DNA from: Octopus bimaculoides
Lineage: Eukaryota
DNA length: 39,175 nt
Direction of reading: 5' to 3'
Assembly: GCF_001194135.2 (NCBI RefSeq)
Contig: NC_068985.1
Coordinates: 119,031,204 to 119,070,378 of the forward strand
Shown in pieces: positions 277 to 37,827 of this stretch; the first letter of the stretch is position 1; each line of letters begins with the position of its first letter. The position numbers and the translations under genes were made by a program. Below the pieces are notes generated by a model that saw only the letters and a program-made list of their open reading frames with translations, did no database searches and was not told the DNA's origin.

Positions 277-282
<6 letters not shown>

Positions 283-489
283 CTTTACTACCCACAAGGG
301 GCTACACACAGAGGGGACAAACAAGGACAGACAAACGGATTAAGTCGATTATATCGACCCCAGTGAGTAACTGGTACTTATTTAATCGACCCCGAAAGGA
401 TGAAAGGCAAAGTCGACCTCGGCGGGATTTGAACTCAGAACGTAGCGGCCGACGAAATACCGCTAAGCATTTCGCCCGGCGTGTTAACG

Positions 490-495
<6 letters not shown>
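277..495 (-). mobile_element. tRNA-derived SINE (here family B) with a Tx1-LINE-like 3' tail
   Basis: The minus strand reads cagaaacgttaacacgccgggcgaaatgcttagcggt...gttctgagttcaaatcccgccgaggtcgactttgcctttcatcctttcggggtcgattaaataagtaccag. It has a B-box-like GAGTTCAAATCC, the same body recurs at 7318, 14355, 16812, 19585 and 19732, and it is flanked by (GT)n. Confidence 0.85.
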
Positions 496-542
<47 letters not shown>

Positions 543-735
543 ATGCATGCATATGTGCACACGTGTGAGTGCAAGTGATTACTATAAAACATATATAACA
601 TTCGACAATATACGTATTATATAGCTGTAGTGATGATGATAATGGTGATGATGACGATGATGTTAGTGGTAGTAGTGATAAAAACAAGAGAACCTCTGTG
701 AGTATGTTTGTGGTTGTATGTATAATGTGAGTGTA

Positions 736-773
<38 letters not shown>

Positions 774-829
774 TGTGTGTGTGTGTGTGTATGCATGTAT
801 ACTATATTTGTATATATGGGTAAACAGCT

Positions 830-960
830 TATAAGTTAGACATGGTATATTGAAAATACGACTATTCCAATAAAATCCAGTTGCAGAAACAATCGAAATC
901 ATATCAGATGATCTATATAAACTCCAAAAATATAACCACCCTATGATACCAGCCAAATAA
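830..960 (+). mobile_element. Penelope-like element (PLE) RT remnant, segment 1
   Basis: Decayed frame ...PVAETIEIISDDLYKLQKYNHPMIPA resembles the PLE RT region after the first catalytic Asp motif (SLDxxxLFTNVPVxETIxII). It continues at 1287 once the MITE is removed. The left boundary is approximate. Confidence 0.6.
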
Positions 961-1286
961 GGTAAATTTTCAGATTAACACCCGCACGATTTTCACTAGG
1001 GTGTTAAGGTTAGGGTTTTAGGGTCAGGGTTTGGGTTTTAGGTTTAGGGTTAGGGTTAGGGTTAGGATTACGGTTAGGGTTAAGGACGGAATTCCCTAAC
1101 CCTAACCCTAAAACCCTAACCCTAACCGTAACCGTAAACCCTAACCCTAACCCTAACCCTAAAACTAACCCTAAAACCCTAACCCTGACCCTAAAACCCT
1201 AACCCTAAAAACCCAACCCTGACCCTAAAACCCTAACCCTAACACCCTAGTGAAAAATCGTGCGGGTGTTAATCTGAAAATTTACC
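961..1286. mobile_element. MITE with 46/47-bp TIRs, 8-bp TSD and head-to-head telomeric repeat arms (putative Merlin-type)
   Basis: TIR ggtaaattttcagattaacacccgcacgattttcactagggtgtta (961-1006) is mirrored at 1240-1286 with one T-run indel. TSD ccaaataa lies at 953-960 and 1287-1294. The interior is degenerate (TTAGGG)n, then GGAATTCC (1088-1095), then (CCCTAA)n. GG termini plus an 8-bp TSD fit the Merlin/IS1016 superfamily (inference). Confidence 0.92.
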
Positions 1287-1506
1287 CCAAATAATTACAA
1301 ATATGCTAGTAATCGACACACCGAAGTAACTTTTCGCTGCCCATAATGTAAGCTATATAAACGAAAAGATGGAGTAGCTTTGCTTTCTCCTCTTAGATAC
1401 GCGTTTGCCACTTTCTATTTAGATATACTAAAATTCAAAATAATACCTGAGCACAAATATATAATATGAACGAGATACATAGACAATATACTAGTTATAA
1501 TGGGGG
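1287..1506 (+). mobile_element. PLE RT remnant, segment 2 (catalytic core)
   Basis: LYKRKDGVALLSPLRYAFATFY (from 1353) matches YxQxDGVAMGSPLxPxxANxY. In-frame RYIDNI (1473-1490) is a decayed RYVDD. One in-frame stop lies between them. Confidence 0.8.
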
Positions 1507-1813
1507 TATAGTGATGTCAGGGTTATCCATTTTTGGTGGTAACGTTGGCTTAGTCAGTATGAGAGAAAGAGGAGTCACCATCTTGTTCGCAACAACAAGA
1601 AAATAGAAATTCACGAGACACTTGTAATAAGTCATAACTTTTGTTATTAGAGGTAATGCGTTAACATACAACGTTAATTGAAGGAAAGCTTATAACATTA
1701 CATGAATATGTTCTGTTTGCCGTCACGTCTCCAAGTATGTAAAGCGAGCATGTGCGCGAGCGGACGCAAAGTGCGGCGGCTTGACTCAATGCCAACCTAA
1801 GGCTAGACAGACA
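1507..1813 (-). mobile_element. Solo LTR 1, 3' part (split by a LINE)
   Basis: Terminus TATAGTGA (decayed TGTAGTGA) is the inverted match of the terminus TCACTACA at 5904-5911. A 4-bp TSD GGGG lies at 1503-1506 and 5912-5915, and removing 1507-5915 restores the PLE frame ...ILVIMGASEDVGK. Confidence 0.7.
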
Positions 1814-4800
1814 CGGAATATTTCTTTATTTGCCTATAATGGCATACATAGATATAACAACAAAGAGGGGTCGTGGACAAACAATGGACAGTCTTACAGG
1901 GGTGGGGATGGGGTCCATGCTGTTGTGATTACAATATGAGGATCAAGATGATAAAAACGTTATGGTTTAAAAATTTTAATGAATGTATAGTTAAAAATAT
2001 TAAATTTTATGTCACTTTCCCTCCAAGTTCTATTCCAATACGCTAGTTTCGAAACTTCATTTTTTCCTTTATTATTTGGCCGAGAGAAATTGTTTTCCTC
2101 CTTCTTCGTTGACTGGCTACACCAGCACGGCCCCATACATACGCAACTTTCTTACTATATTTTCCCATTTTTTTCTCATACACGCTATGAGGCAGGTACT
2201 TTCTCTCCAGACGGATCTTCCTCACAAGGTGGAAGTTGAACCAACTTCCCAACCCGTGTCCGGAGATGAAGTGACCTGTCTCAATCCCTTTTGCTCTTGT
2301 TCGCCACACTGTCTCTTTCAGTATGGCTACTACGCAGAAGAAAGGCTGCCATCCTTTCTTTGTTAAAGGAGGGAGGCGGTACGGTCTTAACTATGTACTC
2401 AGTCCAGAACGTACTCTTTTCCCATCCGACATCAGTTCTTCGACATAGGTCACTAACCCCATCAACTCTCTACAATGTACGAAGGCATATGCGACAGTTT
2501 CACTGATGCGTCCGCACCTCGGACATGTGGTGGGGAGGTTATAACCGTATCTGGACAACCTCTCCTGAACTGGTAACACCGAACGATAGTACAACCAAGC
2601 CAAGGATTTCTGGAAATTATCCAGGTACCTCGGCCCGAATGCCCTCGCGAACAGGCCGGTTAGTTGTTCGTCGTCAAAGCCCAGAGTGTCCCTAAGGACG
2701 TCGTCAGACTTACACTCTACCAACCCTCTATAAAAATCTGCAGTGGTAACCTCACTGCCCGTAATACTTGCTCGGGAGAACATACTGAGTGCTTGTCTGC
2801 ACGCTCTCTGCCATTCCCCATCTTAGGCCTCTGCCTGACCCACGTGCCTAAGTCCTGATGGGACTCCAATTGTGGAAAAAGTTGCTTGGCATGCGGTGAC
2901 CACATTTGCTCACCATCCAAGTAGCGCCGGAGGTGTCTCAGCCTCAACGCATATTTGTGCATCATCAGCCAAGGCATCCCCAGTCCACCCGTTAGCGGTT
3001 TCTGACAACAAATGGAACGCCTCTCAAGTGGCGGTTTCCCCTTGCACAAAAAGTGCAAAAGGATCCTTTTCAGCTTGTTCAGTCACAAACCGAGGCAAGG
3101 CACGATGGTTAGNNNNNNNNNNNNNNNNNNNNNNNNNNNNNNNNNNNNNNNNNNNNNNNNNNNNNNNNNNNNNNNNNNNNNNNNNNNNNNNNNNNNNNNN
3201 NNNNNNNNNNNNNNNNNNNNNNNNNNNNNNNNNNNNNNNNNNNNNNNNNNNNNNNNNNNNNNNNNNNNNNNNNNNNNNNNNNNNNNNNNNNNNNNNNNNN
3301 NNNNNNNNNNNNNNNNNNNNNNNNNNNNNNNNNNNNNNNNNNNNNNNNNNNNNNNNNNNNNNNNNNNNNNNNNNNNNNNNNNNNNNNNNNNNNNNNNNNN
3401 NNNNNNNNNNNNNNNNNNNNNNNNNNNNNNNNNNNNNNNNNNNNNNNNNNNNNNNNNNNNNNNNNNNNNNNNNNNNNNNNNNNNNNNNNNNNNNNNNNNN
3501 NNNNNNNNNNNNNNNNNNNNNNNNNNNNNNNNNNNNNNNNNNNNNNNNNNNNNNNNNNNNNNNNNNNNNNNNNNNNNNNNNNNNNNNNNNNNNNNNNNNN
3601 NNNNNNNNNNNNNNNNNNNNNNNNNNNNNNNNNNNNNNNNNNNNNNNNNNNNNNNNNNNNNNNNNNNNNNNNNNNNNNNNNNNNNNNNNNNNNNNNNNNN
3701 NNNNNNNNNNNNNNNNNNNNNNNNNNNNNNNNNNNNNNNNNNNNNNNNNNNNNNNNNNNNNNNNNNNNNNNNNNNNNNNNNNNNNNNNNNNNNNNNNNNN
3801 NNNNNNNNNNNNNNNNNNNNNNNNNNNNNNNNNNNNNNNNNNNNNNNNNNNGGCTAACACCTTGGCCAAAATCTTTAACTCTGAAGTTTAGTAGAGTTAT
3901 GGGCCTAAAATCATCCCCTTTGCTCGTGTCTTTCTTGATCAGTGTCACAACTCCTCGGCTCACAGATTTGTTGCCAATTCGCGTAAACACTGGCCAGTAT
4001 GTTCCCGAACAAGTCTGGCATACTCTTATAAAATTCATAAGGTAGACCATCTAATCCCAGCGACTTGTCCCCGGGGCACTCGGAAAGCACCTCTATAACC
4101 ACCTTTGCCGTGATCGGCTCTTCACAGCGCTCAGCGTCGCGCGCAGAAAGACGCGGGCCGCTGGCCAGGAAATCCCGTAGGGTATCCACATGGTCCAACA
4201 TCCCTCTCCTCCCGAACAACGTAGCAAAGTGCTCGTGGAAGGCCTTGCACATCTCTTCCTGTCCTTCGATCTTCTGTCCTTGTTAGTTAACCACAGATCT
4301 AATCGTAGCATCCACGCCACGTTGGGTTTCTACCGAGTGAGCCCACCCAGCAACGTTGATACCCTCGCGACCCAATGCACGTACTTTAGCCCAAACTCTG
4401 CAACCTTCGTGTTTGGCATTGAGGTGTCGGTCCAAACCCGATCTCGCCGTAACTAAATCCCTTTCTACTCTAGTCTGCGCTAAACTTAGCTCCTTGCTAA
4501 ATCTAGTTGACTCAATACGAATGGCTTTTTTGAGGGCACTCCACCACCGGTTATTTAATACAGTGCCGGTTAGTACCCTCATAACTAGCACCTTAATCTG
4601 ACTACAGTAAGCTTCACGATCCAATGGGGACTTGTTCAACTTCCAGTAGCCAAATCCCTGTCTATGAACCTTATCTATATGCACCCTACACGTCACTAAT
4701 TTGTGATCCGTGTAGGGTACACAGGTAAACTGTGGACAACTAACACTAGATTTATCTCTAGTATTAACTAAGATCCTATCTATATAGACCTGATTGATCC

Positions 4801-5716
4801 GTCGTGATTCGTCCACGTCCACATTAGCACGTTCGGGTTATCAAGTCTGAATCGATCTGCCAGCCTAAATCGCTTCAGCAGATCGACGAGGCGTGAGTCA
4901 CATTTCCTAGTGTTCGAGGCAGCGCTATCCATGCTCCTGCAGTCTTCACTTTCGTTTACCTCATCTGCAATCCTCTCCACCAACACCACGTACCTCATCA
5001 CAGCCCATAACACCACAAACACCACACATATTCTACCACGGGTGCCAGATAGTCGTACCTTACCTTCGGCCCCAGCAGGTTTACTTCGTCACCGAAGCTT
5101 GCCTTTAGTTTTTTTTTTAAAGTTTTTAATGTCTGTCAGTATACTTTCCATACCTGGAACTCGTATGTTGTCCTTCTCTGCAACTCTTGTAACTGATTTT
5201 ATCTTTTCGATTTTTTCCTCGATGGACACATTTGTCCAGCAGTGCATTACATACACCCTATGTTTGTAATTGTTCAGTGTTACTTGAGGGTCTGCTGGTG
5301 TGTATTCGATTGGAGAATTTGTACTGTCTGTGTTTGTTTGTGTATACCTACCTGAATTTTCTGAACCGTCTGTGAGTACTTGTGAATATTTTACTGGAGT
5401 TATTGGGCTGTTTTTGCCTGGTTGTGTATATTTAGTTGGGGATTCTGAGCTGTCTGCGGTATTCTTGTGTGATTGTTGGAATGTAGAATGCTATGTGTGC
5501 GTTTGTGTGTCAGTTCTTTCTTATTCTTTTTCTTTTTATTTTTGGAGCATCTTCTGGTCTTCATCTCTGCTCTCCGCATCTATCTTCTCCGTACCATCCT
5601 TTGACTTCTCGTTCCTGCTACAAGTCAAACAATCGCCAACAAATAGTAAACAAAGAGCAACTTATCCGTCATGATGCAAAAATCAACTGGGAATCACAAT
5701 ACAAAATCAACTGAGC
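1814..5716 (-). mobile_element. Tx1/L1-clade non-LTR retrotransposon, degenerate and internally deleted
   Basis: Minus-strand frames give APE endonuclease (RLADRFRLDNPNVLMWTWTN; YIDRILV...YTDHKLV; GYWKLN), the linker KSLGLDGLPYEFY, the RT start (GVVTLIKK...DFRPITLLN), GGLGMP and a C-terminal zinc finger (CPRCGRISETVAYAFVHC). AATAAA lies near the 3' end. A 9-bp TSD agacagaca lies at 1805-1813 and 5717-5725. Part of the RT falls in gap 3113-3851. There are several frameshifts and stops. Confidence 0.88.
5100..5480 (-). pseudogene. Probable ORF1 N-terminal remnant of the Tx1 LINE
   Basis: Open minus-strand stretch STFQQSHKNTADSSESPTKY...KYSQVL...NNYKHRVYVMHCWTNVSIEEKIEKIKSV lies downstream of a 5' end beginning gctcagttga and inside the TSD-bounded insert. 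No diagnostic domain was recognised. Confidence 0.4.
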
Positions 5717-5911
5717 AGACAGACAGGCACGGAGTGGCACAAATTTAGAATTTATTTCCTTTATATAAGGGATGGACCGGAAGTCCCCGACTTCAACGTA
5801 AACCGGAAGCTTCCAGGAAGGTCTCGAACATTCTAGAAGCTCGAGGGAGATTACTCTTGTTAAATCCCTTTTCCGTTTTGCTTCCCGTCGTAGCCGCCAG
5901 GGGTCACTACA
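5717..5911 (-). mobile_element. Solo LTR 1, 5' part
   Basis: The minus strand starts TGTAGTGACCCC and carries a TATA-like cttatataaagg plus AATAAA near 5750-5770. It is bounded by the GGGG TSD. Confidence 0.7.
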
Positions 5912-6163
5912 GGGGCATCAGAAGACGTTGGGAAATGAGAGGATCTAGAGAACAACTCTACTAAAATTCGACATTCAAAGCAATACTAATACAATGTCAT
6001 CTCTAGACACAAACATATAGATTAAAAATAAGAAGTACACGGCGAAAGGCACAAACAAACGCATAAACCTCTCCGGAGATAAGGAATGTCCCCGTAACTA
6101 CAAAATGTCTGTGATAAAAATCACTAAGATTCCTTCACAAATAAAATACTAGATAAAGAGATC
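5912..6163 (+). mobile_element. PLE RT remnant, segment 3
   Basis: LKFDIQSNTNTMSSLDT and ECPRNYKMSVIK (about 6084-6119) resemble the PLE motifs LKFTxE...FLD and SECPxRYKxSVI. Confidence 0.75.
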
Positions 6164-6800
6164 TGTAGCGGGCTGGACGTGATGTGCCATATCAGTTCGA
6201 TATGAGTTAGCCTACTACTGAATGTAGCGTGTAAATGTAACGCTCCTAGGTTCTCGCGTCGGAGTAACCAGTGAACATCGAAGAATCAAGAAGGAAGAAA
6301 TATCATTTACATATATTTATTCGTTTGCTCGACAGGTAGTTAAAGAGACAGTAGCAATTCTAGTGATAGTGACAACAAGGATGGCTCGCTGGTTAGTAGT
6401 TGATAGTGTAGAAAAAGGTTGTCTGTCAGTAGAGAGTGAAAGAGTAAGGAATGCACGGTGCTGACTAGAAAGGATAGAGGTGGCATCGTCTTTCTTGCGG
6501 CCGAGGAAAGTGCTGCTTTTGGTCATGGTTGACGCAAAGAGCGGGTGCTGCTCCTTGGTCATAGCTGACACATAAGAAGAAGAGAGAGGAAATTCTCTTT
6601 GTTATATAGACTATGGTCAGTAATGTAGGTCAAACCTTAAACAAAAGACTGACGTTTCCTTGATCAGCACAGGTTCTATGGGGTCGAGTGTTTCCTCATC
6701 AATCAACTGGTGTGGAGAGGATTTCCTGCTCGTTTTGACAAGCAATAAGCGGGTGGATTTGGCTTCAAATCTCAGGCAGGGGTCAAGCTAGATCCCTACA
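6164..6800 (-). mobile_element. Solo LTR 2 (637 bp, probably Gypsy-type)
   Basis: Termini TGTAG...CTACA, with a 4-bp TSD GATC at 6160-6163 and 6801-6804. A minus-strand TATA-like motif (about 6605) precedes AATAAA (about 6318). Excision restores the PLE frame LDKEIHRIKSTLINN. Confidence 0.85.
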
Positions 6801-7317
6801 GATCCACAGAATAAAATCAACATTAATTAACAACTTGTGGAGCAAGCTACTGATGAATATAGACAGAAATATAATGTAACAAATACGTGACGCACTACCT
6901 TTACTAAATATACACATATTACATACTAAGTGTATTCTTTGAATCAAAAGTATGCTCGTTATAGAATAAACGACCCCATTATCGAGAATCTCATGAAACG
7001 AAGTACAAAATGCTTCATACTAAAGCCATTAACTGACATTAAAATATATCACAGAAATGTTAAGATCAAAAGCCTCCTAGCATACAACAAGCATGTAAAT
7101 TCCAGAACAAGCTTCAGATGACCAACATAATTTATAAATTTTACTGTAAAAGTGAAAGTTACAAACTTCATGAACCAAACTTTAATATTGGCCAGACAAG
7201 TATAGCTCTCTCTTTCGTTAGCTCACAATGCATTTACAAGGAGTAATCGCAACAGACTACAGCACACACTATAAAACGAAGCTAGACAGGGAAAAACTAG
7301 TTTCAAATTTTGAGAAG
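6801..7317 (+). mobile_element. PLE remnant, segment 4 (thumb and GIY-YIG endonuclease)
   Basis: QLVEQATDEYRQKY, then in-frame NIIYKFYC (7124)...IGQT (7187), then after a frameshift LTMHLQG...KLDREKLVSNFE. This is the GIY-YIG layout typical of PLEs. Confidence 0.75.
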
Positions 7318-7484
7318 GTAAGTCGATTATATCGATCTCCAGTGTTCAACTACTACTTATTTTATCGACTCCGAAAGGCTGAAAGGCACAGTTGGTTCTG
7401 GCGGCATTTGAACTCAGAACGTAGATTTGTAAGATATACCGCTAAGCATTTCCCGGCGCGGTAACGATTCTGCCAGCTTGCTGC
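7318..7484 (-). mobile_element. SINE family B copy
   Basis: Homologous to 277-495 over head and body (ttgaactcagaacgtag...ccgctaagcatt...tgccagcttgctgc). Confidence 0.8.
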
Positions 7485-7570
7485 ATTAAATAGGAAAATA
7501 TTAACAGATAATACATCCATACTTTATAGAATTCTTCAGAAAAATACATGCTTATAGAAGCACTGCCCGC
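7485..7570 (+). mobile_element. Possible second PLE GIY-YIG C-terminal fragment
   Basis: LNRKILTDNTSILY...LIEAL motifs. They duplicate the motif position of 7280-7315, so this is probably a different copy. Confidence 0.35.
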
Positions 7571-8029
7571 CCCAAACAGTAAGCAGTACTTGTATGTGAA
7601 TGTGTGTGGGTGGTGGAAGAGTCTTAGCAACTAATGAAGGAAGAAATGCTTTCTGACTTTAATTTTCTATTCTTTGTCATGTGGTTTTGTCTGTTTTAAC
7701 TATGTGGGGGTTGCCGCAAGAGACAACCAAAGATTGTGTTTCGTTTGCTTGCAGAGCTAAAATCAATTCCCATGAAAATAGCTTGGAGAGGAAACGTGCT
7801 CCACCAAATAAACGTACTCAAAATAAGCTATATTAGAACTGTGGCTTTGCTAGATCTCTTCTAATACAAACAATTATGAGACTAGCTACATGCTGAGTTT
7901 TTAAGATCTTCAATCAACTATTCTATGATTTGTAGGTGGCTGAGGATTCCATAGATACGTGTACCCTTAACGTAATTCTAGGGCGAAATCAGTGTGAGAT
8001 AGTGTTTGAGAAAATTGTACCTTTGCGTA

Positions 8030-8190
8030 TGAGATACGGTTGGTGTGACAGGTTTCCACACAGTTTCTGTCTACCCAGTTTTGCCCACAAAGCATGAGTT
8101 GACCTGAGAGACTTGCCTTAAAAAAGGCCATGTGTGATTGAATTTGGGGTCTCATGAATGTGAAATGAACGTCTTAACCACATGGCCATT
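8030..8190 (-). mobile_element. Old, decayed CORE-type SINE head (family A)
   Basis: The minus strand reads tggccatgtggttaag...ggcaagtc...ggtagacagaaactgtgtggaaacctgtc and parallels the family A head at 24600. Confidence 0.45.
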
Positions 8191-8427
8191 TGTTTGCACA
8201 TACATACATGCACTTATACATACATACATACATACATACAAACATACATACATACATATGTTTCTTGCAACTTACCGCACCAGTCTAGTCTGGTAAGAGT
8301 GTCGGTTTACTCGCTGACGACTCGATCATGCAGCAGGTTGTACTGGATTCCACGTTACCAGTGAGACTCATGAGAGTGCTCACAAGTGACCATGCATACA
8401 TACATACATACATACATACATACATAC

Positions 8428-8820
8428 TATTCTATCCAGATTACAAATTCAGGTTTATACCTGTAATTATTGGGGCACTGGGATATGTAACACACTACCT
8501 AAGTACCAACCTTGAGAAATTAGGCTTTTCGAAAACAGAAAGGGGAAAGCTGATTCGAAGACTACAGGTCCAAAACATCATTGGAACTGTAAAACTCTGT
8601 AAAACTTTCCAGAAGTTTAACATTTAAGTATATATGACATGCAACTATATGCATGAGAATACATACATATAACAAACCATACAAATCTACACATATACAT
8701 ACATAAATAAAAAATTACTCTATTGATGTTGTAGAAACTCGAATGAAGGAGCCTTGGATCTAGGTTAGAAACCGGTTCTTTCTCTAGTGGAAAGAAATTT
8801 TGAAATAAAACTGAATAATC
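8428..8820 (+). mobile_element. 5'-truncated Dong/R4-clade LINE 3' end
   Basis: C-terminal frame YPDYKFRFIPVIIGALGYV...LGF...KLIRRLQ...GTVKLCKTFQKFNI* followed by a 3' UTR. It is flanked on both sides by (CATA)n. The clade call is from motif recall. Confidence 0.7.
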
Positions 8821-8901
8821 ACATACATACATACATACATACATACAAACATACATGATGGCTGTATTCCAAATAATGGCATTGCTTGACTGTTCTCTTA
8901 A

Positions 8902-9400
8902 CCCATTAAGTGCCAAATTTTTATTCATATTTTTTAGCTTTACCAGGTGTATATAGTATCTAATTTATAGCATTTGTATTTAGATTTTATTCATATGTGA
9001 ATTATTTTGGAAATTATAAATTTTTCGAAAAGTCCCTAATGGGGATCGCTGTAAAAAAGCATGTTTATCGTTTTCTATTTAATTGCAATAATAAACATTT
9101 TATTACTTTTTTTAACTATAGTATTAAATGCGAATGTATAAAATATCAACGAATGCAAAAAAAAAAAAAAGAAATCGCTTTCAAAGCAATATTTTTGTAG
9201 TTCAAAAATTGCAATTTATGACATAAAATGTCCTCTAGAATTAGCCAGAGCTAATAATGACAAACTTTAACTACTAAATATTGTTAAATACACCTCTGCA
9301 AATGGAATATACATAAGCAATTCACTTTAGATACAACGAACAACCGGCAGTGAAATTGTTTTTAGCAGATCCCCAAATGGGGCTCATAGCAGGCAATGGG
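8902..9400. mobile_element. piggyBac-type MITE (499 bp)
   Basis: TTAA at 8898-8901 and 9401-9404. Termini CCCATT...AATGGG; the imperfect TIR matches 10 of the first 14 nt. AT-rich non-coding interior. Confidence 0.65.
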
Positions 9401-10019
9401 TTAAACATAAGTAGCACAGGTGTCGCTTTTCATTCCTGCACAAGTGTGGTACCGATGGACCCGTCTTGCTGCAGAGACCTTAAACAGCCGTGCTGACACC
9501 TGCCTTCATTCCATCATGGAATTTTTCATTAATCATTTTGCCTTTTTCAGCTACGACCAACCATATTAGGTAACACATAATAGGAAATTTATTGGAGATG
9601 TTGAATATCAAGTGATGTCTGTTTTTTTTTAGGAAAGGCCTTGCACAGGGCCTATCCCGCTATCTAAACAATGTATACATTTGCCTCAAAAGAAAGAACT
9701 AGTCTACGTTATTGGATCCAAACGAAGTCACAGACTTTAAATCCGAGCAAGCATGAAGAGCTTGCAGGCCGAAAAGTAAAACTTGTCAAAGGACAGATAA
9801 ACTTAGTAGCTGAGAGGGAGAGATCCTTAGTCTTTGTTTAGATATCTCTGTAGGAGAAAAAAAAAACATACACACAGGTGCCACTTTGGCGTGTGATCTG
9901 CAATTTAAAGGGAGATTACTTTAGGTTACATTTTAGTTTACTTTGTGTTAGTGCTACTTTGCCGTATGACCTACGTGAGCGAATTTACTTTGGTGGGTGA
10001 TCTACGTGCTTATCTTAAT

Positions 10020-11163
10020 TGTGGGTGCGCTGAAAGTGTAGCTGCTAGAATAAGAATAGCCTGGGCAAAGTTTAGAGAGCTCTTACCCCTGCTGGCGACA
10101 AAGGGACTCTCACTCAGAGTAAAAGGCAGACTGTATGACGCATGCGTACGAACAACCATGCTACATGGCAGTGAAACATGGGCTGTAACTGCTGAGGACA
10201 TACGTAAGCTCGCAAGGAATGAAGCCAGTATGCTCCGTTGGATGTGTAATGTCAATGTGAATACCCGTCAGAGTGTAAGTATCTTGAGAGAAAAGCTGAA
10301 CATTAGAAGCATCAGTTGTGGCGTGCAAGAGAGACGATTGCGCTGGTATGGACATGTGGTGAGAATGGANNNNNNNNNNNNNNNNNNNNNNNNNNNNNNN
10401 NNNNNNNNNNNNNNNNNNNNNNNNNNNNNNNNNNNNNNNNNNNNNNNNNNNNNNNNNNNNNNNNNNNNNNNNNNNNNNNNNNNNNNNNNNNNNNNNNNNN
10501 NNNNNNNNNNNNNNNNNNNNNNNNNNNNNNNNNNNNNNNNNNNNNNNNNNNNNNNNNNNNNNNNNNNNNNNNNNNNNNNNNNNNNNNNNNNNNNNNNNNN
10601 NNNNNNNNNNNNNNNNNNNNNNNNNNNNNNNNNNNNNNNNNNNNNNNNNNNNNNNNNNNNNNNNNNNNNNNNNNNNNNNNNNNNNNNNNNNNNNNNNNNN
10701 NNNNNNNNNNNNNNNNNNNNNNNNNNNNNNNNNNNNNNNNNNNNNNNNNNNNNNNNNNNNNNNNNNNNNNNNNNNNNNNNNNNNNNNNNNNNNNNNNNNN
10801 NNNNNNNNNNNNNNNNNNNNNNNNNNNNNNNNNNNNNNNNNNNNNNNNNNNNNNNNNNNNNNNNNNNNNNNNNNNNNNNNNNNNNNNNNNNNNNNNNNNN
10901 NNNNNNNNNNNNNNNNNNNNNNNNNNNNGGCACATAAAAGACACCATTTCGAGCGTGGCCGTTTTCGTGCGGGTGACACGTAAAAGCACCCACTACACTC
11001 TCTGAGTGGTTGGCGTTAGGAAGGGCATCCAGCTGTAGAAACTCTGCCAAATCAGACTGGAGCCTGGTGTTGCCATCCGGTTTCACCAGTCCTCAGTCAA
11101 ATCGTCCAACCCATGCTAGCATGGAAAGCGGACGTTAAACGATGATGATGATGATGATGATGA
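10020..11163 (+). mobile_element. 5'-truncated RTE-clade LINE
   Basis: GCAESVAARIRIAWAKFRELLPLL...MLHGSETW...MLRWMC...RRLRWYGHVVRM is the RTE ORF C-terminal region. After gap 10370-10928 come a 3' UTR (taaaagcacccactacactc...ggaagggcatccagc) and a (GAT)n tail. Confidence 0.88.
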
Positions 11164-11325
11164 TTCTTGGTTTCTTATTACCATTTACCAAGACATAGAT
11201 AAAACATGGTTTTCTTGTCATTAGAATAGTAAGAATTTTGAAAAAATACATTTACAATGTCCTACAGTAATCTCCCTTGTAAATAACACGCCAAAGTGAC
11301 ACATACATACATACATACATACATA

Positions 11326-11470
11326 CAATCTATTAGTGGCACAGTGAAGATTTGTAAGACACTCCAAAGATTCTCCATTTGAGTTTCTTATGTGAATAGA
11401 TGCACACACCTGGGTGTATGCATCAACAGCTCAGTCAACACATCAACTCAACCACATATTTACAAACACC
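11326..11470 (+). mobile_element. Second Dong/R4 3'-end fragment
   Basis: QSISGTVKICKTLQRFSI* (stop 11380-11382) begins immediately after (ACAT)n at 11301-11326 and has the same terminal motif as the 8428 copy. Confidence 0.6.
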
Positions 11471-11479
11471 AGGAACTCT

Positions 11480-11960
11480 CTGAACTCAAAAAGTCTTGTC
11501 GCTTTGTTGACGACCGGCTTAAACTCTCAAGAAGAACTTAAAACTCACAGAAAAATCTCTTTTACATGAGACAGTACGTTATAAAAAAAAAACTTTCAGG
11601 GTAAGTGTTTATAAGAAGATATTGGCATAAAAAATCTCAATTTTTATTGCAGAGATCTGATTACACTACATGAAAAGAATTGAAGAGTGCTTTAGAAATG
11701 GCATTTACAAAAATCTAACCAAACTATTCAAGCCAAAAATTATTATCCAATAACCCTACGTCAAGTATAAGATCAATACTGGTTATATGAACCTGTTCTT
11801 ATACGGTCATTATGCTATCTCCGAAGTTTTGCTCTATACACCTGAACAAGCTGGGAGAAAGAAAAAAGTATGAAACTGCATAGAATGGTTAGTTATTGAT
11901 CCAAGAGGAATCAGCAAAGAGCTGTAAGAATTTAATCATAAGATGGCAGTAGCATGGCAC
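11480..11960 (+). mobile_element. Decayed Dong/R4-like RT N-terminal fragment
   Basis: Scattered motifs RYWHKK, AKNYYPIT and EQAG...CIEWLVID resemble YWxKKL / NYRPIT / EQxG..K...CxxQLLID. Many stops and frameshifts. Confidence 0.5.
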
Positions 11961-12257
11961 GGGTTCTTGACTTTTGGGGGTAAGGTTGCTTTTGGTGTTT
12001 CACTTTCGCCTGTTCTGTGTATCACATTTGATATACAGGACATGTTTCCTTGACATGCATACATCATACAGTCACACCACTAGTGTAACTTGGAACTTAA
12101 CATACACCAAAACAAATAGTGTGCTCAGCTGCTTCCACTCTAATGACCGCGATGACGTTGCCGCGGAGAATGGCCAGTGACACTCGCTACAGCAGCCATT
12201 CTACCTCGTGGAGTTCATTTTTTTTGGTTTCAAATGAACAACTGGATGCTTTTTAAG

Positions 12258-12505
12258 TACTCTTTTACACTTTTACTTGTTTCAGTCATTTGACAGCGGC
12301 CATGCTGGAGCACCGCCTTAAAGCGTTTTTTTAGTCAAAGAAATCGACCCTAGGACTTATTCTTTGTAAGCCTAGTACTTATTTTATCGGTCTCTTTTGG
12401 CGAACTGTTAAGTTACGGGGTGCATAAACACATTAACGTCGGTTGTCAAGTGATGGTGGGGAGACAAACATAAAGACAAAGACATACACACGCATATATA
12501 TACAT
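12258..12505 (-). mobile_element. SINE family A, 3' half
   Basis: acttgtttcagtcatttgacagcggccatgctggagcaccgcc...aagttacgggg...gttgtcaag recurs at 12578, 16370, 24886 and 39060. Confidence 0.85.
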
Positions 12506-12576
<71 letters not shown>

Positions 12577-12577
12577 C

Positions 12578-12760
12578 TCTTACTCTTTTACTTATTTCAG
12601 TCATTTGATTGTGGCCATGCTGGAGCACCGCCTTTTGGTCGAGTTAATCGACCCCAGGACTTATTCTTTGGAAGCCTAGTACTTATTCTATCCATCTCTT
12701 TAGCCGAACCGCTAAGTTACGGGGACGTAAACACACCAGCATCGATTGTCAAACGATGTT
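12578..12760 (-). mobile_element. SINE family A, 3' part, truncated at the inverted-duplication breakpoint
   Basis: Homologous to 12258-12470; homology stops at aaacgatgtt, where the duplicated segment begins. Confidence 0.85.
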
Positions 12761-13116
12761 TAGTTTTATTCCAAGGATATTAAAACCCACATCACCCTCA
12801 GCCTTGACTGGAAGCTTCAACAAAAATAGTAATACTCACATGTTCTATCTCAAAAGAAAATATGGAGAGAGAAGCTTCAGATCGGTCCATACAGACTTTT
12901 AATGTCATATAGAAGCAACCAAAAAATTTTTCCAAACTACAGCAGATTAACACAGTGTTTAAAGTGATATAACATGCTTTGAATCAAAACTGAACTAGGC
13001 ACAGTTGTGGCTGTATGGTAAGAAGCTTGCTTCTCAACTACAAGGTTCCGGGTTCAGTCACACTGCGGGGCACCTTGTGCAAATATCTTCTACTATGGCC
13101 TCGGCCGACCAAAGCC
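12759..13116 (+). repeat. Left arm of a 358-bp inverted duplication (includes a family A SINE head at about 12997-13116)
   Basis: Reverse complement of 13997-14354, with the same length and about 4 substitutions by eye. Confidence 0.95.
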
Positions 13117-13955
13117 GGTAATTCCCGGGAAAGCGGGGCTTATCCCTTGGTTTCGTTCTCATAGTTGTTTCGCTAATCCAATAACAACAATACAAAGTAT
13201 GTAGCTCTTAGAAGGGCTTTTGTACATTTACAGAGAATACCAAACTGTCTTTCACAAGACCTTGTTTTTAGGAATTCCCAATAAGTTATGAATACCCAAA
13301 TTGTGAAGTCAGTTACGTAAAAACTTGAAATTAGTTACCCGATAGTAAGAATTCAAATAAAGTAGCCCCGAAAAGGGCTTTAATGCGTCCCCAGAGTTTA
13401 TAGAACTTAGGAGGAAATACTGATAAGGTATGTATACTAAAATCGTGAAACATGTTACGTAATAACGGGCTAATCAGATATGAGATAATAAATATTCAAA
13501 GTAAATAACTCTGAAAAGGGCTTTTGGGCGTTCCCAGAGAATATTACTTTCAGCGGCGCTAGTGTTGGTATATTCGTGAATAAGTCACTAGCTGAAATAA
13601 GTACATCTATTGTTTAGGAAAATACTATTTACTTGTTGAAGGGTTGTACTGGATAAATTGCGAAAATAACAGTTCAAATACTACGAAATAAGCATACTCA
13701 ATTTGATTTATACTAAATGATTTAGGAAAATGAATGGGTTATTTCCCTTGGCTGTTAAAACGAAATATATTAGATATATATATAAGGATCCTTTCCAGGG
13801 GCCCTATTATCGATTTTTTTCCTACAATCTGAGTATGCCATGAGGTTTCCAGACATGAGCTGTACTCACGTGTCAAGTTTTCTCAAAATCGATAAAACTA
13901 TGTAGGAGGAGTTATCTAACAACTCCCCAAACACACCCACTGACAGAATTTCCCA
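13117..13955 (+). mobile_element. Non-autonomous element, probably Helitron/Helentron-like, with internal degenerate subrepeats
   Basis: A 5' mini-hairpin CCCG-ggaaag-CGGG, three diverged copies of gtagc...aagggcttt...cagag, and a 3' block gtgtcaagttttctcaaaatcg. A second, inverted, truncated copy lies at 35666-35915. No TSD is seen. Confidence 0.55.
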
Positions 13956-14117
13956 ACGGGCTACTTTCCGTTTCCGTCTATCAAATCCACTCATATGGCT
14001 TTGGTCGGCCGAGGCCATAGTAGAAGATATTTGCACAAGGTGCCCCGCAGTGTGACTGAACCTGGAACCTTGTAGTTGAGAAGCAAGCTTATTACCATAC
14101 AGCCACAACTGTGCCTA
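13954..14117 (-). mobile_element. SINE family A head (tRNA-like plus CORE-like domain)
   Basis: The minus strand reads ggcacagttgtggctgtatggtaa...ggttcagtcacactgcggggcaccttgtgcaaatatcttctactatggcctc...gcccgt. The ggcaccttg-gcaag-cttc block resembles the CORE domain of MIR-type SINEs. Confidence 0.8.
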
Positions 14118-14354
14118 GTTCAGTTTTGATTCAAAGCATGTTATATCACTTTAAACACTGTGTTAATCTGCTGTAGTTTGGAAAATTTTTTTGGTTGCTT
14201 CTATATGACATTAAAAGTCTGTATGGACCGATCTGAAGCTTCTCTCTCCATATTTTCTTTTGAGATAGAACATGTGAGTATTACTATTTTTGTTGAAGCT
14301 TCCAGTCAAGGCTGAGGGTGATGTGGGTTTTAATATCCATGGAATAAAACTAAA
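13997..14354 (-). repeat. Right arm of the 358-bp inverted duplication
   Basis: Reverse complement of 12759-13116. Confidence 0.95.
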
Positions 14355-14522
14355 GCGGCGAGAAGGCTGAACCATTAGCTCGTCGGGCAGAATGCTTAGC
14401 AGCATTTCTTCCGTCTTTACGTACTGAGTTCAAATTCCGCCGGGGCCGACTTTGCCTTTCATTTCTTTTGAGGTAGATAAAATAAATACTAGTTTGGACT
14501 TGTGCCAAAATTTGAAACCAAT
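14355..14522 (+). mobile_element. SINE family B copy with the ...gtgccaaaatttgaaacc tail
   Basis: gcggcgag...aatgcttagc...tgagttcaaattccgcc...ttgcctttcat...ttgtgccaaaatttgaaacc. Confidence 0.8.
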
Positions 14523-16529: not shown

Positions 16530-18000
16530 TGTACTCTGAACGTATTTGACTAAACTTCTAAAAGAAAAAATAAAAGAGGAATCATTCAACAAAGAATTGT
16601 CAAAAATCAGTGAAGAAATAAGTCGTTTTAGACCAAGAATAGGAATTTGTGAAGGAATATTTAACTTAGACATATATCAAACTGCCCTAAACATAAAACA
16701 AAATGTCTACATATGTTTTATAGAATATACTAAATGTCAGACAGTAAAACATACAAAGATAATCGAATGTCTATCAGGATTTGGGATATGTAAAAACACT
16801 GAAATATTGGCTTCAAATTTTGGTACATGGCTAGCAGGTTCGAGGGAATGGGAAAGTTGGTTACATCAACTCCAGAAGTCAACTGGCACTTATTTTATCG
16901 ACTTCCGGGAGGATGAAAGGCAAAGTCGATCTCAGCGGAATTTCAACTCAGAATGTAAGGGCAGACAAAATGCCGCTAAGCATTTTGCACGGCGTGATAA
17001 CATTTCTGCCATCTCGTCACCTTAGGCACAATCCGAAATTTTGCGGTGAGGGTGGGTTAGTCGATCACATCGATCCCAGTATTTGACTGGTACTTATTTC
17101 ATCGACCTCGAAAGGATGTGAGGCACAAATAATAATGAAAATATTCTGTGCGCAATCAACAGTGGTGTGCGTCAAACAGGGAAAACCTCAAACTTTAAAA
17201 TGAAGAACGGAGTCATGCAAGGTTGTGTACTATCTTCTAGCCTATTACACTTATACATTATACATGAAGTACAAGGCATACTAAGAGTATCAGTAAGAAG
17301 GGTGAACATCGACAATCGTGGTTATGCAGACGATAAGAGCAGTGATCTACAGAAACTTGTGACTACTGTAAATGACAAACCAGAGTCTTATTGAATGGAA
17401 TGAAGGTAAAGAGACGAAAATCAATGTTAATCAGCAAGAAACATGAGTTACCAAAAATAGATATTACAATCATAGGGAAAATTAATTGAACAGATATCGA
17501 AGATTAATATACCTACGATATAAATTGGAAATGTAGTGCAGAAATCAAAAGAAGGATTGAGATAGCGAGGAAGACCTTTGCAAAAAAACAAAAAACAAAA
17601 AAATCAAATATACTAACATAAGAAACATCAATTGCGAAAGTAGAAAAAGAAGATTATTAAAGTGTTATGTATGGTCTACTCTAGAATATAGAGCTGAAAC
17701 AGAGGCATTAACAATAGGATAATTAAACTACAAATCTTTGAGACGTAGGTGTATGAACATTTTTGAGAATATCGTGGATAGAGCACCAAATCAATGACAA
17801 AAATACTATGACAAAAGCAAAGAAAATGTTGCAAGACACTGTGAAAGAGGAGAAAACTAAAATATTTATCTTGGCCACTTAATTAAAAGAAACAGTTTGC
17901 AGATGTTTGGTAGAAGCTAGAATGAATGGGGAAAAAACGAAATTTACGTAGATAAATATCAGGAATTGGACAGACTAAAATATAATAAGTGTATAAGGAC
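16530..18000 (+). mobile_element. Decayed RTE-clade LINE RT region, interrupted by SINEs at about 16812-17125
   Basis: EGIFNL...VYICFIEY.K, GVMQGCVLS, GYADD, AEIKRRIEIARKTF and LLKCYVWSTL are collinear RTE RT motifs with many stops. Confidence 0.8.
16812..17125 (-). mobile_element. Two adjacent SINE family B copies (16812-17022 and partial 17023-17125)
   Basis: Both carry the ctggtacttatttt-atcgac...gaaagg core; the first retains the head. Confidence 0.8.
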
Positions 18001-19584: not shown

Positions 19585-19900
19585 GATTTCAAATTTTGGC
19601 ACAACACCACTAATTTCGGGGGAGGGAATTAGTCAGTCACATCGACCCCAGTGTTCAACTGGTACTTATTTTATTGACCCCGAAAATATGAAAAGCAAAG
19701 TGGACCTCGGCGGTTTCTGAACTCAGAAAAAGGTTTCAAATTTTGGCACAAGGCTAGAAATTTCGGGAGAGGGAGTAAGTCAATTACTTCGACCCCAGTA
19801 TTCAACTGGTACTTATTTTATCGACCTCAAAAGGACGAAAGGCAAAGTGAATCTCAGCGGAATTTCAATCGAGAACGTAAAGACAGACTAAATGCCGCTT
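19585..19900 (-). mobile_element. Two tandem SINE family B copies (19585-19727, 19732-19900)
   Basis: Each reads ttcaaattttggcacaa...tcgaccccagt.ttcaactggtacttatttt...gaaaggcaaagt...gagaacg on the plus strand. Confidence 0.85.
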
Positions 19901-36738: not shown

Positions 36739-37827
36739 TGTAGTGAATCTTGCAGGTATAAAGTGGATTCGATCCACCATAGTCAAATTTAAATTAACAC
36801 TTCAATAGAACTTTTCTCGCGGAAAAACAATAGTGTTTCTGTTATAGCAGTTTTACATTTGCCAGATTGCCTTAGCTCGGCCGAAATAATGTCTTCACCA
36901 ATTGACCCTTTCTAACCTATTCTACTTTACCAAAAGCTAGAATATCACAGTACCACCAACGAAGCCCATTGGGATCTTTTTTAAAACGGGGGCCACATTT
37001 TTCATTAATGTTTTACGTAGTGTTTTTGGTACCGAAAGACTTTCAAACTTCGTATACTTATCTATTTTGTGTTATAGAACAGAAAAATATTTTTGTATTC
37101 GAATTTATTTCATGTAAAAAATTGTCTTATTTCGATAATTTCAACCAATCACTGACAAGTATTCAGTTGTTTATATTTACTCCTTTGGCTGATTAAGCCA
37201 TAGCTTCGTTTTATTTGCTTTTTTCATTTTAAATTTGCTTTTTTCATTTTCTTTTTTTTTTCTTCGTTTTATTTGCTTTTTTCTTTTTAAATTTGCTGTT
37301 TTACCCTAACCCTAACCCTATCACCGATAGAATTGTTTCAAAATCGTTTGTTTATGTAGTCGGCACTTAATGTATATCGGTTGAATGGACGTCAGTGATT
37401 GGTTGAAATTACAGAAATACGACAACTTTAACATGGAATAACTTAGGGATTTCTTTATTTTTTAAAGAAGACTAAGAGAAAAAGATGTTTTATATGACAC
37501 ATTCTACCAGTGTTCCAAGTTTCAAAGTGTTTCGTTAATGAAAAATGTGGCCCCCGTTTTAAAAAAGATCCGCCCATTGTTCTCAACGATATGTCTATTC
37601 TTCTGGGTAGTTATAAAAGCAAGAATCCCCGAGCGAAGAGACATTCAGTCTGCTTGTGACAACTCAATAAGTTAGCGAATGACAACCGAGTCAGAGACAA
37701 CTATTATCAGTTAGGGGGCGGAACGCTAGAATCATATTCACAATCAAGGCAGCTACTAAAGACAATGGTCAGCAAGGGAAATGAAATTTATTGTCAGCAA
37801 CTGTGAGACAACTCCCACAACCCTACA
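36739..37827 (-). mobile_element. Possible solo LTR 3 hosting the 36972 MITE
   Basis: Termini TGTAG (36739) and CTACA (37823-37827), about 480 bp net of the MITE, with a minus-strand TATA-like tttataac. No TSD match (gtga vs actt). Confidence 0.35.
36972..37571. mobile_element. 600-bp MITE with perfect 37-bp TIRs, 8-bp TSD and an internal (CCCTAA)3 (putative Merlin-type)
   Basis: TIR ggatcttttttaaaacgggggccacatttttcattaa at 36972-37008 and inverted at 37535-37571. TSD gcccattg at 36964-36971 and 37572-37579. accctaaccctaacccta at 37303-37320. Confidence 0.92.

What the first reader, a model, noticed from the sequence alone, without database searches (positions are those of the whole stretch)
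953..1294. A transposon that delivers a ready-made telomere-fusion mimic: MITE with head-to-head (TTAGGG)n/(CCCTAA)n arms
Seen: the 326-bp element is almost wholly a foldback. It has unique 46/47-bp TIRs, then degenerate TTAGGG units (variants TTTTAGGG, TCAGGG, TTACGG) pointing inward to a central GGAATTCC, then CCCTAA units. The variant order is mirrored for roughly the first 35 bp of the repeat arms. An exact 8-bp TSD (ccaaataa) flanks it, and removing it rejoins a Penelope RT remnant. Established: (TTAGGG)n-(CCCTAA)n is the orientation left by end-to-end chromosome fusion (e.g. the human chromosome 2 fusion site), TTAGGG is the widespread metazoan telomere repeat, and GG termini with 8-9-bp TSDs characterise Merlin/IS1016 transposons. 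Inference: this is a mobile interstitial telomeric sequence. It could scatter G-quadruplex/cruciform-forming, TRF-bindable sites and telomerase seeds in both directions through the genome, and it would be mis-read as a fusion scar. I do not know of this being described in cephalopods, but cannot exclude it.
Basis: partly seen in the sequence, partly recalled or inferred. Interest (0 to 1): 0.8.

Follow-up and report, generated by a model that had tools for sequence, protein, structure and literature searches.

The report
Octopus jumping element carrying telomere-like repeats
A 326-base non-coding "jumping gene" in an octopus genome consists almost entirely of two head-to-head blocks of telomere-like repeats, so stretches that look like scars of chromosome fusion can be spread by transposition.

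Summary
Window 961-1286 is a 326-bp foldback element with 46/47-nt terminal inverted repeats (TIRs) that start with GG. An exact 8-bp target-site duplication (TSD), CCAAATAA, flanks it. The interior is only (TTAGGG-like)n, then GGAATTCC, then (CCCTAA-like)n. It is a bona fide TIR-transposon insertion and most likely a Merlin-type MITE.

New evidence:
- The same TIR type bounds a TSD-flanked 3.1-kb foldback in Octopus sinensis.
- A second GG-terminus, 8-bp-TSD foldback MITE in this window (36972-37571) carries (CCCTAA)3 near its centre.
- A relative of that second MITE in O. bimaculoides carries head-to-head arrays. The left one is collinear, variant by variant, with the left arm of this element (85% identity).
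- The arrays are a degenerate, inherited module with a 20-bp period, not fresh telomerase product.

Not supported: the "Penelope RT remnant" at the insertion site.

Untested:
- Copy number of this exact family, because no cephalopod genome could be searched whole.
- The autonomous partner.
- G4 formation, TRF binding and telomerase seeding.

Verdict: a new variant of a known kind, of moderate interest.

The parts
953..960 (.). Left copy of the 8-bp target-site duplication CCAAATAA
   Evidence: Identical to 1287-1294.
961..1006 (+). Left TIR of E1, GGTAAATTTTCAGATTAACACCCGCACGATTTTCACTAGGGTGTTA. The first 38 nt are the core shared with an O. sinensis element.
   Evidence: 46/47 match to the right TIR. 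34/38 identity to both termini of L001:161-3272.
1003..1085 (+). Left array of 13 TTAGGG-type units, G-rich strand running towards the centre
   Evidence: TRF periods 6 and 20. Unit parse. Collinear with L005:5897-5971, 64 identical positions across the 75-nt L005 segment (87 alignment columns); 0/1000 unit-order shuffles reach the score.
1088..1095 (.). Central palindrome GGAATTCC, the symmetry centre of the foldback
1094..1243 (+). Right array of 23 CCCTAA-type units, mirror of the left array with internal expansions. The 20-bp period consensus is CCCTAACCCTAACCCTAAAA.
   Evidence: TRF score 164 at period 20 versus 145 at period 6. Unit parse.
1240..1286 (-). Right TIR of E1
1287..1294 (.). 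Right copy of the TSD CCAAATAA
36972..37571 (.). E2, a second foldback MITE of 600 bp. It has perfect 37-nt GG-initiated TIRs and the 8-bp TSD GCCCATTG at 36964-36971 and 37572-37579.
   Evidence: Other copies exist in O. bimaculoides L005: 4505-4602 at 99% and 5575-6284 at about 86%.
37304..37321 (+). (CCCTAA)3 just right of the centre of E2, in the same orientation as the right arm of E1
   Evidence: This and E1 are the only two loci in the window with TTAGGG dimers (0.07 expected by chance).

Best explanation
E1 (window 961-1286) is a non-autonomous foldback DNA transposon, a MITE. A DDE transposase supplied in trans, most probably of the Merlin (IS1016/IS1595-related) superfamily, recognised its roughly 38-47-nt GG-initiated TIRs. 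It excised the element and pasted it into a staggered 8-bp cut at CCAAATAA, creating the duplication.

The whole interior is an inverted pair of one roughly 80-bp telomere-derived minisatellite module. The module is made of TTAGGG-type units with a 6+6+8 = 20-bp higher-order period. Its G-rich strands point to the centre, so the element looks like a miniature telomere-telomere fusion.

The module is inherited cargo, not telomerase product made at this locus. A collinear copy sits at the centre of a different TSD-flanked foldback MITE family in O. bimaculoides. The right arm of E1 later expanded by slippage.

Shown: element boundaries, TIR, TSD, foldback, array structure, homology of the array with L005, recurrence of the TIR type in O. 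sinensis, and the hallmarks of true Octopus Merlins.

Inferred: Merlin as the mobilising enzyme, insertion of TIRs and arrays together as one unit, and the ultimate telomeric origin of the module.
For: - Structure and TSD. Chance control: 0 hits in each of 30 shuffles. Hairpin z = -19.8.
- No ORF longer than 22 aa lies inside the element.
- L001:161-3272 in O. sinensis has termini that are 34/38 identical to E1 and an exact 8-bp TSD, AAAAAAAT.
- E2 in the same window has GG termini, the 8-bp TSD GCCCATTG and (CCCTAA)3 right of centre.
- L005:5575-6284 in O. bimaculoides is a 710-bp foldback with TSD TAACGTTG. Its arms are about 86% identical to E2. Head-to-head arrays sit at its centre in the same orientation as in E1.
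- The left array of E1 aligns to the left array of L005 at 64 identical positions across the 75-nt L005 segment (87 alignment columns), including the rare run TTAGGA-TTACGG-TTAGGG-TTA. No unit-order shuffle of 1000 reaches that score.
- In three of the four arrays scanned (E1 right arm, L005, L004), a 20-bp period scores best; in the left arm of E1, periods 6 and 20 score about equally, 82 and 80.
- Merlin is defined by 5'-GG termini, 8-9-bp TSDs and TIRs of 24-462 bp. O. bimaculoides has 191 Merlin sequences (PMC8101967).
- A complete O. sinensis Merlin, L013:9557-11176, has GGCAC... termini, the TSD AAATTCAC and a 301-aa PF12762 ORF.
- TTAGGG is the only experimentally determined cephalopod telomere motif (PMC13218726).
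Against: - Only one copy with this exact TIR-plus-array structure was seen. The O. sinensis element with E1-type TIRs has no telomere-like units.
- None of the Octopus Merlins fetched has E1-type termini. They start GGCAC... or GGCGATG....
- hAT, P, Zisupton and some Mutator elements also make 8-bp TSDs (my own knowledge).
- How the same array module came to lie between different TIRs is unexplained. No E1-like TIR flanks the arrays in L005, E2 or L004.
- This assembly is gap-rich, with 11 N runs. Repeat counts inside a 326-bp palindrome may be inexact.
Confidence: 0.75

Rival explanations
1. Same kind of element, different enzyme. E1 is a MITE mobilised by another superfamily that makes 8-bp TSDs (hAT, P, Zisupton or Mutator/Foldback), not by Merlin.
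For: No transposase with E1 termini was found among the Octopus loci examined. E1 has no sequence similarity to the Merlin TIRs seen in L013 and L001-L004 beyond the initial GG. An 8-bp TSD is not unique to Merlin (my own knowledge).
Against: Terminal GG together with an 8-bp TSD is the published Merlin signature. hAT and P termini are usually YARNG or CANRG (my own knowledge). All four TSD-flanked GG-terminus foldbacks seen here have exactly 8-bp TSDs. Merlin is unusually abundant in Octopus.
Confidence: 0.18
2. In-situ origin. A short palindromic MITE inserted here, then broke at its centre. Telomerase extended both 3' ends and the ends were rejoined. On this view the arrays were made at this locus and are not mobile cargo.
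For: The arrays sit exactly at the palindrome centre. Their polarity, with the G strand running 5'->3' towards the centre on both sides, is what 3' extension of a central break would give. The arms are unequal, 131 versus 195 bp. The E1-type TIR exists without arrays in L001.
Against: The units are degenerate. Their order is mirrored between the arms (I2) and is collinear with an array at another locus in another MITE family. A shared 20-bp higher-order period is not expected from independent telomerase synthesis.
Confidence: 0.07
3. Assembly fold-back artefact. The palindrome is a chimeric or collapsed product of short-read assembly.
For: The window is a gap-rich draft with 11 N runs. Palindromes and simple repeats are error-prone in such assemblies.
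Against: An exact 8-bp TSD and unique 46-nt TIRs are not produced by chimeras. The nearest gap is about 1.8 kb away, at 3113. Structurally equivalent TSD-flanked foldbacks occur in independent assemblies of O. bimaculoides and O. sinensis.
Confidence: 0.03
4. Genuine scar of an ancestral end-to-end chromosome fusion, or a fusion-type interstitial telomeric sequence.
For: Head-to-head (TTAGGG)n-(CCCTAA)n is the orientation of fusion sites such as human 2q13 (PMC6410037).
Against: The arrays total only about 230 bp. They are bounded by unique inverted repeats and an 8-bp TSD. Homologous arrays lie inside other MITEs.
Confidence: 0.01

Closest known systems
Merlin superfamily DNA transposons and their MITEs (Feschotte 2004, as summarised in PMC8101967)
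   Same: 5'-GG termini, 8-bp TSD and TIR length within the 24-462-bp range. Non-autonomous derivatives exist. The superfamily is abundant in Octopus bimaculoides.
   Different: No DDE_Tnp_IS1595 partner with these termini was identified. The interior is nothing but an inverted telomere-like minisatellite. I found no description of that for Merlin in the papers searched.
Foldback (FB-type) elements of Drosophila and other animals and plants (my own knowledge)
   Same: Almost the whole element is two long inverted arms built from short tandem subrepeats. It folds into one hairpin.
   Different: The TSD is 8 bp, not 9 bp. The subrepeats are telomere-type hexamers and octamers. The superfamily is probably different.
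Tandem-repeat-carrying non-autonomous elements of molluscs, such as Helentron-borne satellite-like arrays in the Pacific oyster (PMC7492417, seen) and bivalve tandem-repeat MITEs (my own knowledge)
   Same: Mobile elements that disperse short tandem arrays through a mollusc genome.
   Different: In those the arrays run in one direction and are not telomere-like. Helentrons move by rolling circle and have no TIR or TSD.
Ciliate Tel-1 and TBE1 transposons bounded by telomeric repeats (my own knowledge)
   Same: Transposons that carry the host telomere motif in inverted orientation.
   Different: In ciliates the repeats form the outermost termini, with polarity like a free chromosome end. Here they are internal to unique TIRs and point inwards.
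Fusion-type interstitial telomeric sequence, e.g. human 2q13 (PMC6410037)
   Same: Head-to-head (TTAGGG)n-(CCCTAA)n.
   Different: Fusion sites lack TIRs and TSDs, are flanked by subtelomeric DNA and are single historical events.

Membership tests
Merlin superfamily (DNA/TIR) | TIRs begin with 5'-GG | tested here: met
   GGTAAATTTT... at both ends. Criterion from PMC8101967.
Merlin superfamily (DNA/TIR) | 8- or 9-bp target-site duplication | tested here: met
   Exact 8-bp CCAAATAA. A true Octopus Merlin, L013, also has an 8-bp TSD.
Merlin superfamily (DNA/TIR) | TIR length 24-462 bp | tested here: met
   46/47 nt, with a 38-nt core shared with L001.
Merlin superfamily (DNA/TIR) | Mobilised by, or derived from, an element encoding a DDE_Tnp_IS1595 transposase with the same termini | tested here: inconclusive
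   No Merlin remnant in the window (tblastn). The Octopus Merlins fetched have other termini, GGCAC... and GGCGATG.... Only about 133 kb of Octopus DNA outside the window could be examined.
MITE | Short, non-coding, with TIRs and a TSD | tested here: met
   326 bp. The longest internal ORF is 22 aa. TIR and TSD.
MITE | Many homogeneous copies in the genome | tested here: inconclusive
   One copy in the window and one element with E1-type TIRs in O. sinensis. The viral, metagenome and prokaryote collections give 0 hits but hold no cephalopod genomes.
Foldback (FB-like) elements | The arms form nearly the whole element and are built of tandem subrepeats | tested here: met
Foldback (FB-like) elements | 9-bp TSD and FB/MuDR-type transposase, as in Drosophila FB | tested here: not met
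   The TSD is 8 bp. The transposase could not be tested.
Fusion-type interstitial telomeric sequence | Head-to-head arrays joined directly to subtelomeric DNA of two chromosome ends, with no transposon hallmarks | tested here: not met
   Unique TIRs and a TSD bound the arrays.
Telomerase-inserted short ITS (break repair) | Near-perfect repeats in one direction, inserted without TIR or TSD | tested here: not met
   Two orientations. Degenerate units with a 20-bp higher-order period, collinear with another locus.
   Pfam six-frame scans with E up to 1 give only the LINE zf-RVT about 1.3-1.4 kb away.

The most novel reading that the evidence does not exclude
These octopus foldback MITEs may be fossils of real chromosome-end events.

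The proposed sequence is as follows. A transposon end came to lie next to a healed or eroding telomere. Sister-chromatid (telomere-telomere) fusion or hairpin replication then turned 'TIR + proximal telomere variants' into a perfect palindrome with two TIRs. The transposase could then mobilise that palindrome.

On this reading the element literally carries a captured telomere-fusion junction. Such elements, rather than karyotype change, would be a main source of interstitial telomeric sequence in octopus genomes.

Three observations are compatible with this:
- Every array-bearing element is a whole-length palindrome with the arrays at its centre.
- The TTACGG variant is mirrored near the centre of E1.
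- The two arms of the L001 foldback are each a composite that contains a Merlin end with no TSD of its own. This suggests that a whole arm was duplicated in inverted orientation.
Probability: 0.15. Interest if true: 0.75.

Novelty: new variant of a known kind. Interest (0 to 1): 0.5.

Why it matters
Interstitial TTAGGG tracts in animal genomes, molluscs included, are routinely read as traces of chromosome fusion or fission (for example PMC12506671). [quoted passage not shown]

Here two different TSD-flanked MITE families in Octopus carry head-to-head telomere-like arrays. This gives a concrete, testable case in which such tracts are spread by cut-and-paste transposition.

If these elements are abundant they would have several consequences:
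- They would confound fusion-scar and telomere-motif scans of cephalopod assemblies.
- They would seed hairpin- and G4-prone sites across the genome.
- They would offer a natural system for asking whether telomere proteins or telomerase act on dispersed sites.

The functional consequences are entirely untested.

Tried and rejected
1. TIR pattern scans. Scans of viral contigs, metagenome contigs (two patterns) and genome contigs gave 0 hits. These collections hold no cephalopod genomes, so the result is uninformative.

2. Protein database, TIR-encoded peptides. A search meant to catch ORFs called on other copies gave nothing.

3. Protein database, window ORFs. A window LINE ORF gave nothing. 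Exact look-ups of window ORFs found none on record.

4. Merlin loci from ENA and Logan (L006-L012). They share no Octopus SINE or MITE sequence with the window; L012, fetched later, was only read by eye and shows no E1-like termini. They were set aside.

5. An inference I made and then rejected. I first took E2 to be a deletion derivative of the Merlin that encodes P0004, because 98 nt of E2 are 99% identical to DNA beside that gene. The junction shows otherwise. The Merlin's own GGCAC... terminus abuts position 98 of another E2 copy. This shows only that E2 is multi-copy.

6. Nested-E1 hypothesis. I tested whether the arrays in L005, E2 and L004 come from nested, decayed E1 copies. The sequences flanking those arrays have no significant similarity to the E1 TIR.

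7. E1 versus E2 termini. Their similarity is weak: 66 of 2000 shuffles reach the observed score.

8. Rfam. E1 gives only sub-threshold, generic miRNA-hairpin hits.

9. Pfam. The flanks give no Penelope, RT or GIY-YIG signal.

Full report
**1. The observation**

Window 961-1286 is a 326-bp element. An exact 8-bp direct repeat, CCAAATAA, flanks it at 953-960 and 1287-1294. Its ends are unique inverted repeats. They match at 46 of 47 positions, with one 1-nt indel in a T run, and 33 nt are perfect (I13).

Between the TIRs there is nothing but repeats:
- 13 TTAGGG-type units on the left (1003-1085), 6 of them perfect;
- the palindrome GGAATTCC at 1088-1095;
- 23 CCCTAA-type units on the right (1094-1243), 17 of them perfect.

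The inverted identity runs on from the TIR into the arrays. Positions 990-1051 and 1195-1256 are 94% complementary (I2). So the same order of variants (TTAGGG, TTTTAGGG, TCAGGG, TTKGGG, TTTTAGG) is mirrored. The rare TTACGG variant also occurs near the centre in both arms.

The arms are unequal, 131 versus 195 bp. The right arm carries extra copies of a 20-bp (6+6+8) higher-order unit.

As single-stranded DNA the element folds into one hairpin, -124 kcal/mol, z = -19.8.

A mechanical search for 10-nt perfect inverted termini plus an exact non-palindromic 8-bp TSD gives 3 hits in the window, 2 with GG termini. It gives none in 30 shuffles.

The nearest assembly gap is at 3113. There is no internal ORF above 22 aa.

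The structural observation is therefore confirmed and far beyond chance.

**2. The one claim that fails**

I joined the flanks and scanned all six frames of window 601-2400 against Pfam at E up to 1. The only hit is zf-RVT, the C-terminal zinc knuckle of a LINE reverse transcriptase encoded on the minus strand at about 2250-2400. That is roughly 1.3-1.4 kb from the insertion. No RT or GIY-YIG signal lies near 960/1295. The immediate flanks are single-copy within the window.

**3. Which genome**

The public DNA collections that can be scanned hold no cephalopod genomes, and TIR patterns found nothing there.

I reached Octopus DNA by another route:
- I took an O. bimaculoides Merlin protein from the supplement of PMC8101967.
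- I searched the protein database with it.
- I fetched the loci encoding the Octopus hits: L001, L003, L004, L013 and L014 from O. sinensis, L002 from O. vulgaris, and L005 from O. bimaculoides.

The window shares SINE copies at about 90% with these loci. It also shares a 98-nt stretch at 99% with O. bimaculoides. It is therefore an Octopus genome, most likely O. bimaculoides.

TTAGGG is the only experimentally determined cephalopod telomere motif (PMC13218726).

**4. Evidence that the element type is mobile**

(a) In O. sinensis, L001:161-3272 is a 3,112-bp foldback. Both of its termini, GGTAAAATTACAGATTATCACCCCCACGATTTTCACTA, are 34/38 identical to the E1 TIR. It has its own exact 8-bp TSD, AAAAAAAT. 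It has no coding ORF (the few ORFs of 70 aa or more listed are low-complexity repeat translations) and no telomere-like units.

(b) The window holds a second foldback MITE, E2 (36972-37571, 600 bp). It has perfect 37-nt GG-initiated TIRs and the exact 8-bp TSD GCCCATTG.

(c) E2 is multi-copy in O. bimaculoides. L005:4505-4602 is 99% identical to E2 positions 1-98. L005:5575-6284 is a 710-bp relative, with arms about 86% identical and its own 8-bp TSD, TAACGTTG.

**5. The telomere-like arrays are a shared, inherited module**

The only two places in the 39-kb window with TTAGGG dimers are E1 and the centre of E2 (0.07 expected by chance). E2 has (CCCTAA)3 just right of its centre, the same polarity as the right arm of E1.

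The E2 relative in L005 is a palindrome over its whole length. Its centre is a head-to-head pair of degenerate arrays, G strand at 5888-5965 and C strand at about 5975-6030. This is again the polarity of E1.

The left array of L005 aligns with the left array of E1 at 64 identical positions across the 75-nt L005 segment (87 alignment columns), and in the same order of variants. The order is TTAGGG, TTTTAGGG, T(C/G)AGGG, TT(T/C)GGG, TTTTAG....., TTAGGA, TTACGG, TTAGGG, TTA(A/T)G... None of 1000 permutations of unit order reaches the observed score (z = 4.4). This is as strong as the control comparison of the two arms of E1 with each other (z = 3.5).

A third array, in a decayed O. sinensis foldback (L004:7392-7490), shows weaker collinearity (9 of 1000). 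Its polarity relative to its foldback is opposite.

In three of the four arrays scanned (E1 right arm, L005, L004), Tandem Repeats Finder scores a 20-bp period above the 6-bp period; in the left arm of E1, periods 6 and 20 score about equally, 82 and 80.

The arrays are therefore a telomere-derived minisatellite that is transmitted as sequence. They are not telomerase product laid down independently at each site.

I could not explain how the same module lies between different TIR families. The DNA next to the arrays in L005, E2 and L004 has no significant similarity to the E1 TIR, so simple nesting of E1 copies is not supported.

**6. Superfamily**

The literature defines Merlin by 5'-GG termini, 8- or 9-bp TSDs and TIRs of 24-462 bp. 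It reports O. bimaculoides as the protostome with the most Merlin sequences, 191 (PMC8101967).

A complete Merlin fetched here shows these hallmarks in Octopus. L013:9557-11176 is 1,620 bp, with TIR GGCACTGTCATGCC..., TSD AAATTCAC and a 301-aa PF12762 ORF.

E1, E2, the L001 foldback and the L005 MITE all have GG termini and exactly 8-bp TSDs.

However, none of the Merlins I could fetch has E1-type or E2-type termini. The window has no Merlin remnant.

I first thought E2 derived from the Merlin that encodes P0004. The junction shows instead that this Merlin's own GGCAC terminus abuts position 98 of another E2 copy, so I withdrew that inference.

Merlin membership is thus a well-motivated inference, about 0.6 on its own. 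It is not a demonstration.

**7. Mechanism**

The best-supported account is cut-and-paste insertion of a non-autonomous foldback element by a trans-acting DDE transposase, probably Merlin. The enzyme recognises the roughly 38-47-nt TIRs and makes 8-bp staggered target cuts. The inverted telomere-like module is carried as cargo. The right arm later expanded by replication slippage.

Rivals:
- Another superfamily that makes 8-bp TSDs. This is plausible.
- In-situ telomerase healing of a break at the palindrome centre. The mirrored, degenerate variant order shared across loci argues against it.
- Assembly artefact. The TSD, the unique TIRs and equivalent elements in independent assemblies argue against it.
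- A true fusion scar. The TIRs and TSD refute it.

**8. A more novel reading that is not excluded**

Every array-bearing element is a whole-length palindrome with the arrays at the centre. In L001 each arm is a composite that even contains a Merlin end without a TSD of its own. This suggests that a whole arm was duplicated in inverted orientation.

A transposon end lying next to a healed or eroding telomere, followed by sister-chromatid fusion, would produce exactly TIR-(TTAGGG)n-(CCCTAA)n-TIR. That structure could then be mobilised. I put this at about 0.15. Section 9 and the next-steps field say how to test it.

**9. Comparison, novelty and limits**

The element works like a Merlin-type MITE and looks like an FB-type foldback. 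Its cargo resembles a fusion-type interstitial telomeric sequence.

Full-text searches found no description of a TIR element carrying head-to-head telomere repeats in cephalopods or elsewhere. [quoted passage not shown] Curated repeat libraries such as Repbase and Dfam could not be consulted, so prior curation cannot be excluded.

I rate it a new variant of a known kind, with interest about 0.5. It is real and tidy. It is relevant to how interstitial telomere repeats are interpreted in mollusc genomes (compare PMC12506671).

The following remain untested:
- genome-wide copy number;
- the autonomous partner;
- every proposed functional effect (G4 or cruciform formation, TRF binding, telomerase seeding, rearrangement hotspots).

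Noticed in passing
window 36972-37571: Second foldback MITE (E2). It has perfect 37-nt GG-initiated TIRs, the 8-bp TSD GCCCATTG, T-rich tandem repeats and (CCCTAA)3 near its centre. Other copies occur in O. bimaculoides L005.
   Followed up: yes
window 12759-14354: A 1.6-kb long inverted repeat (palindrome) whose arms are alignable over about 800 bp (623 of 887 columns identical). The termini start TTTAGTTTTATTCC, not GG. No clear TSD was worked out.
   Followed up: partly
window 2391-4822 (minus strand): LINE-type retrotransposon remnant with the end of the endonuclease, RT pieces and a zf-RVT tail, interrupted by an assembly gap at 3113-3851. This is the only RT-related signal near the finding.
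   Followed up: partly
window 278-495, 7319-7472, 14369-14494, 16854-17008, 19625-19899: Several copies of a roughly 200-bp SINE-like repeat, about 80-90% identical to each other and to copies in the O. sinensis loci. This helped to place the window in Octopus.
   Followed up: partly
window 31403-31774: An ORF whose C-terminus reads like the end of a Tc1/mariner transposase. This was judged by eye only and not scanned.
   Followed up: no
L001:161-3272 (O. sinensis): A 3.1-kb foldback with E1-type TIRs. Its two arms are 91% identical and each holds roughly 120-bp subrepeats that contain a TIR-like ATTTTCAC motif. Further in, each arm holds a GGCAT-type Merlin end with no direct TSD, as if a composite arm had been duplicated in inverted orientation.
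   Followed up: partly
L013:9557-11176 (O. sinensis): Apparently complete 1,620-bp Merlin: TIR GGCACTGTCATGCC..., 8-bp TSD AAATTCAC, and an intact 301-aa DDE_Tnp_IS1595 ORF.
   Followed up: yes
L001, L002 and L003, about 4265-12996: An 8.7-kb element present at three loci in O. sinensis and O. vulgaris at 98-99.6% identity. It has roughly 354-bp TIRs starting GGCGATGTTTCGC and carries the Merlin gene P0077. A 470-bp derivative with TSD CAAAAGAG/CAGAAGAG lies at L004:10779-11248.
   Followed up: partly
L005:4494-4602 (O. bimaculoides): The GGCAC-type terminus of the Merlin encoding P0004 abuts position 98 of an E2 copy (target CTATTTTG). The left end of that Merlin and the rest of that E2 copy were not found in the 8-kb contig.
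   Followed up: partly
window 1088-1095 and L001 around 285: The centre of E1, ACGGAATTCC, resembles CCGGAATTCC inside the subrepeats of the L001 element with E1-type TIRs. This may be a remnant of shared ancestry or may be chance.
   Followed up: no
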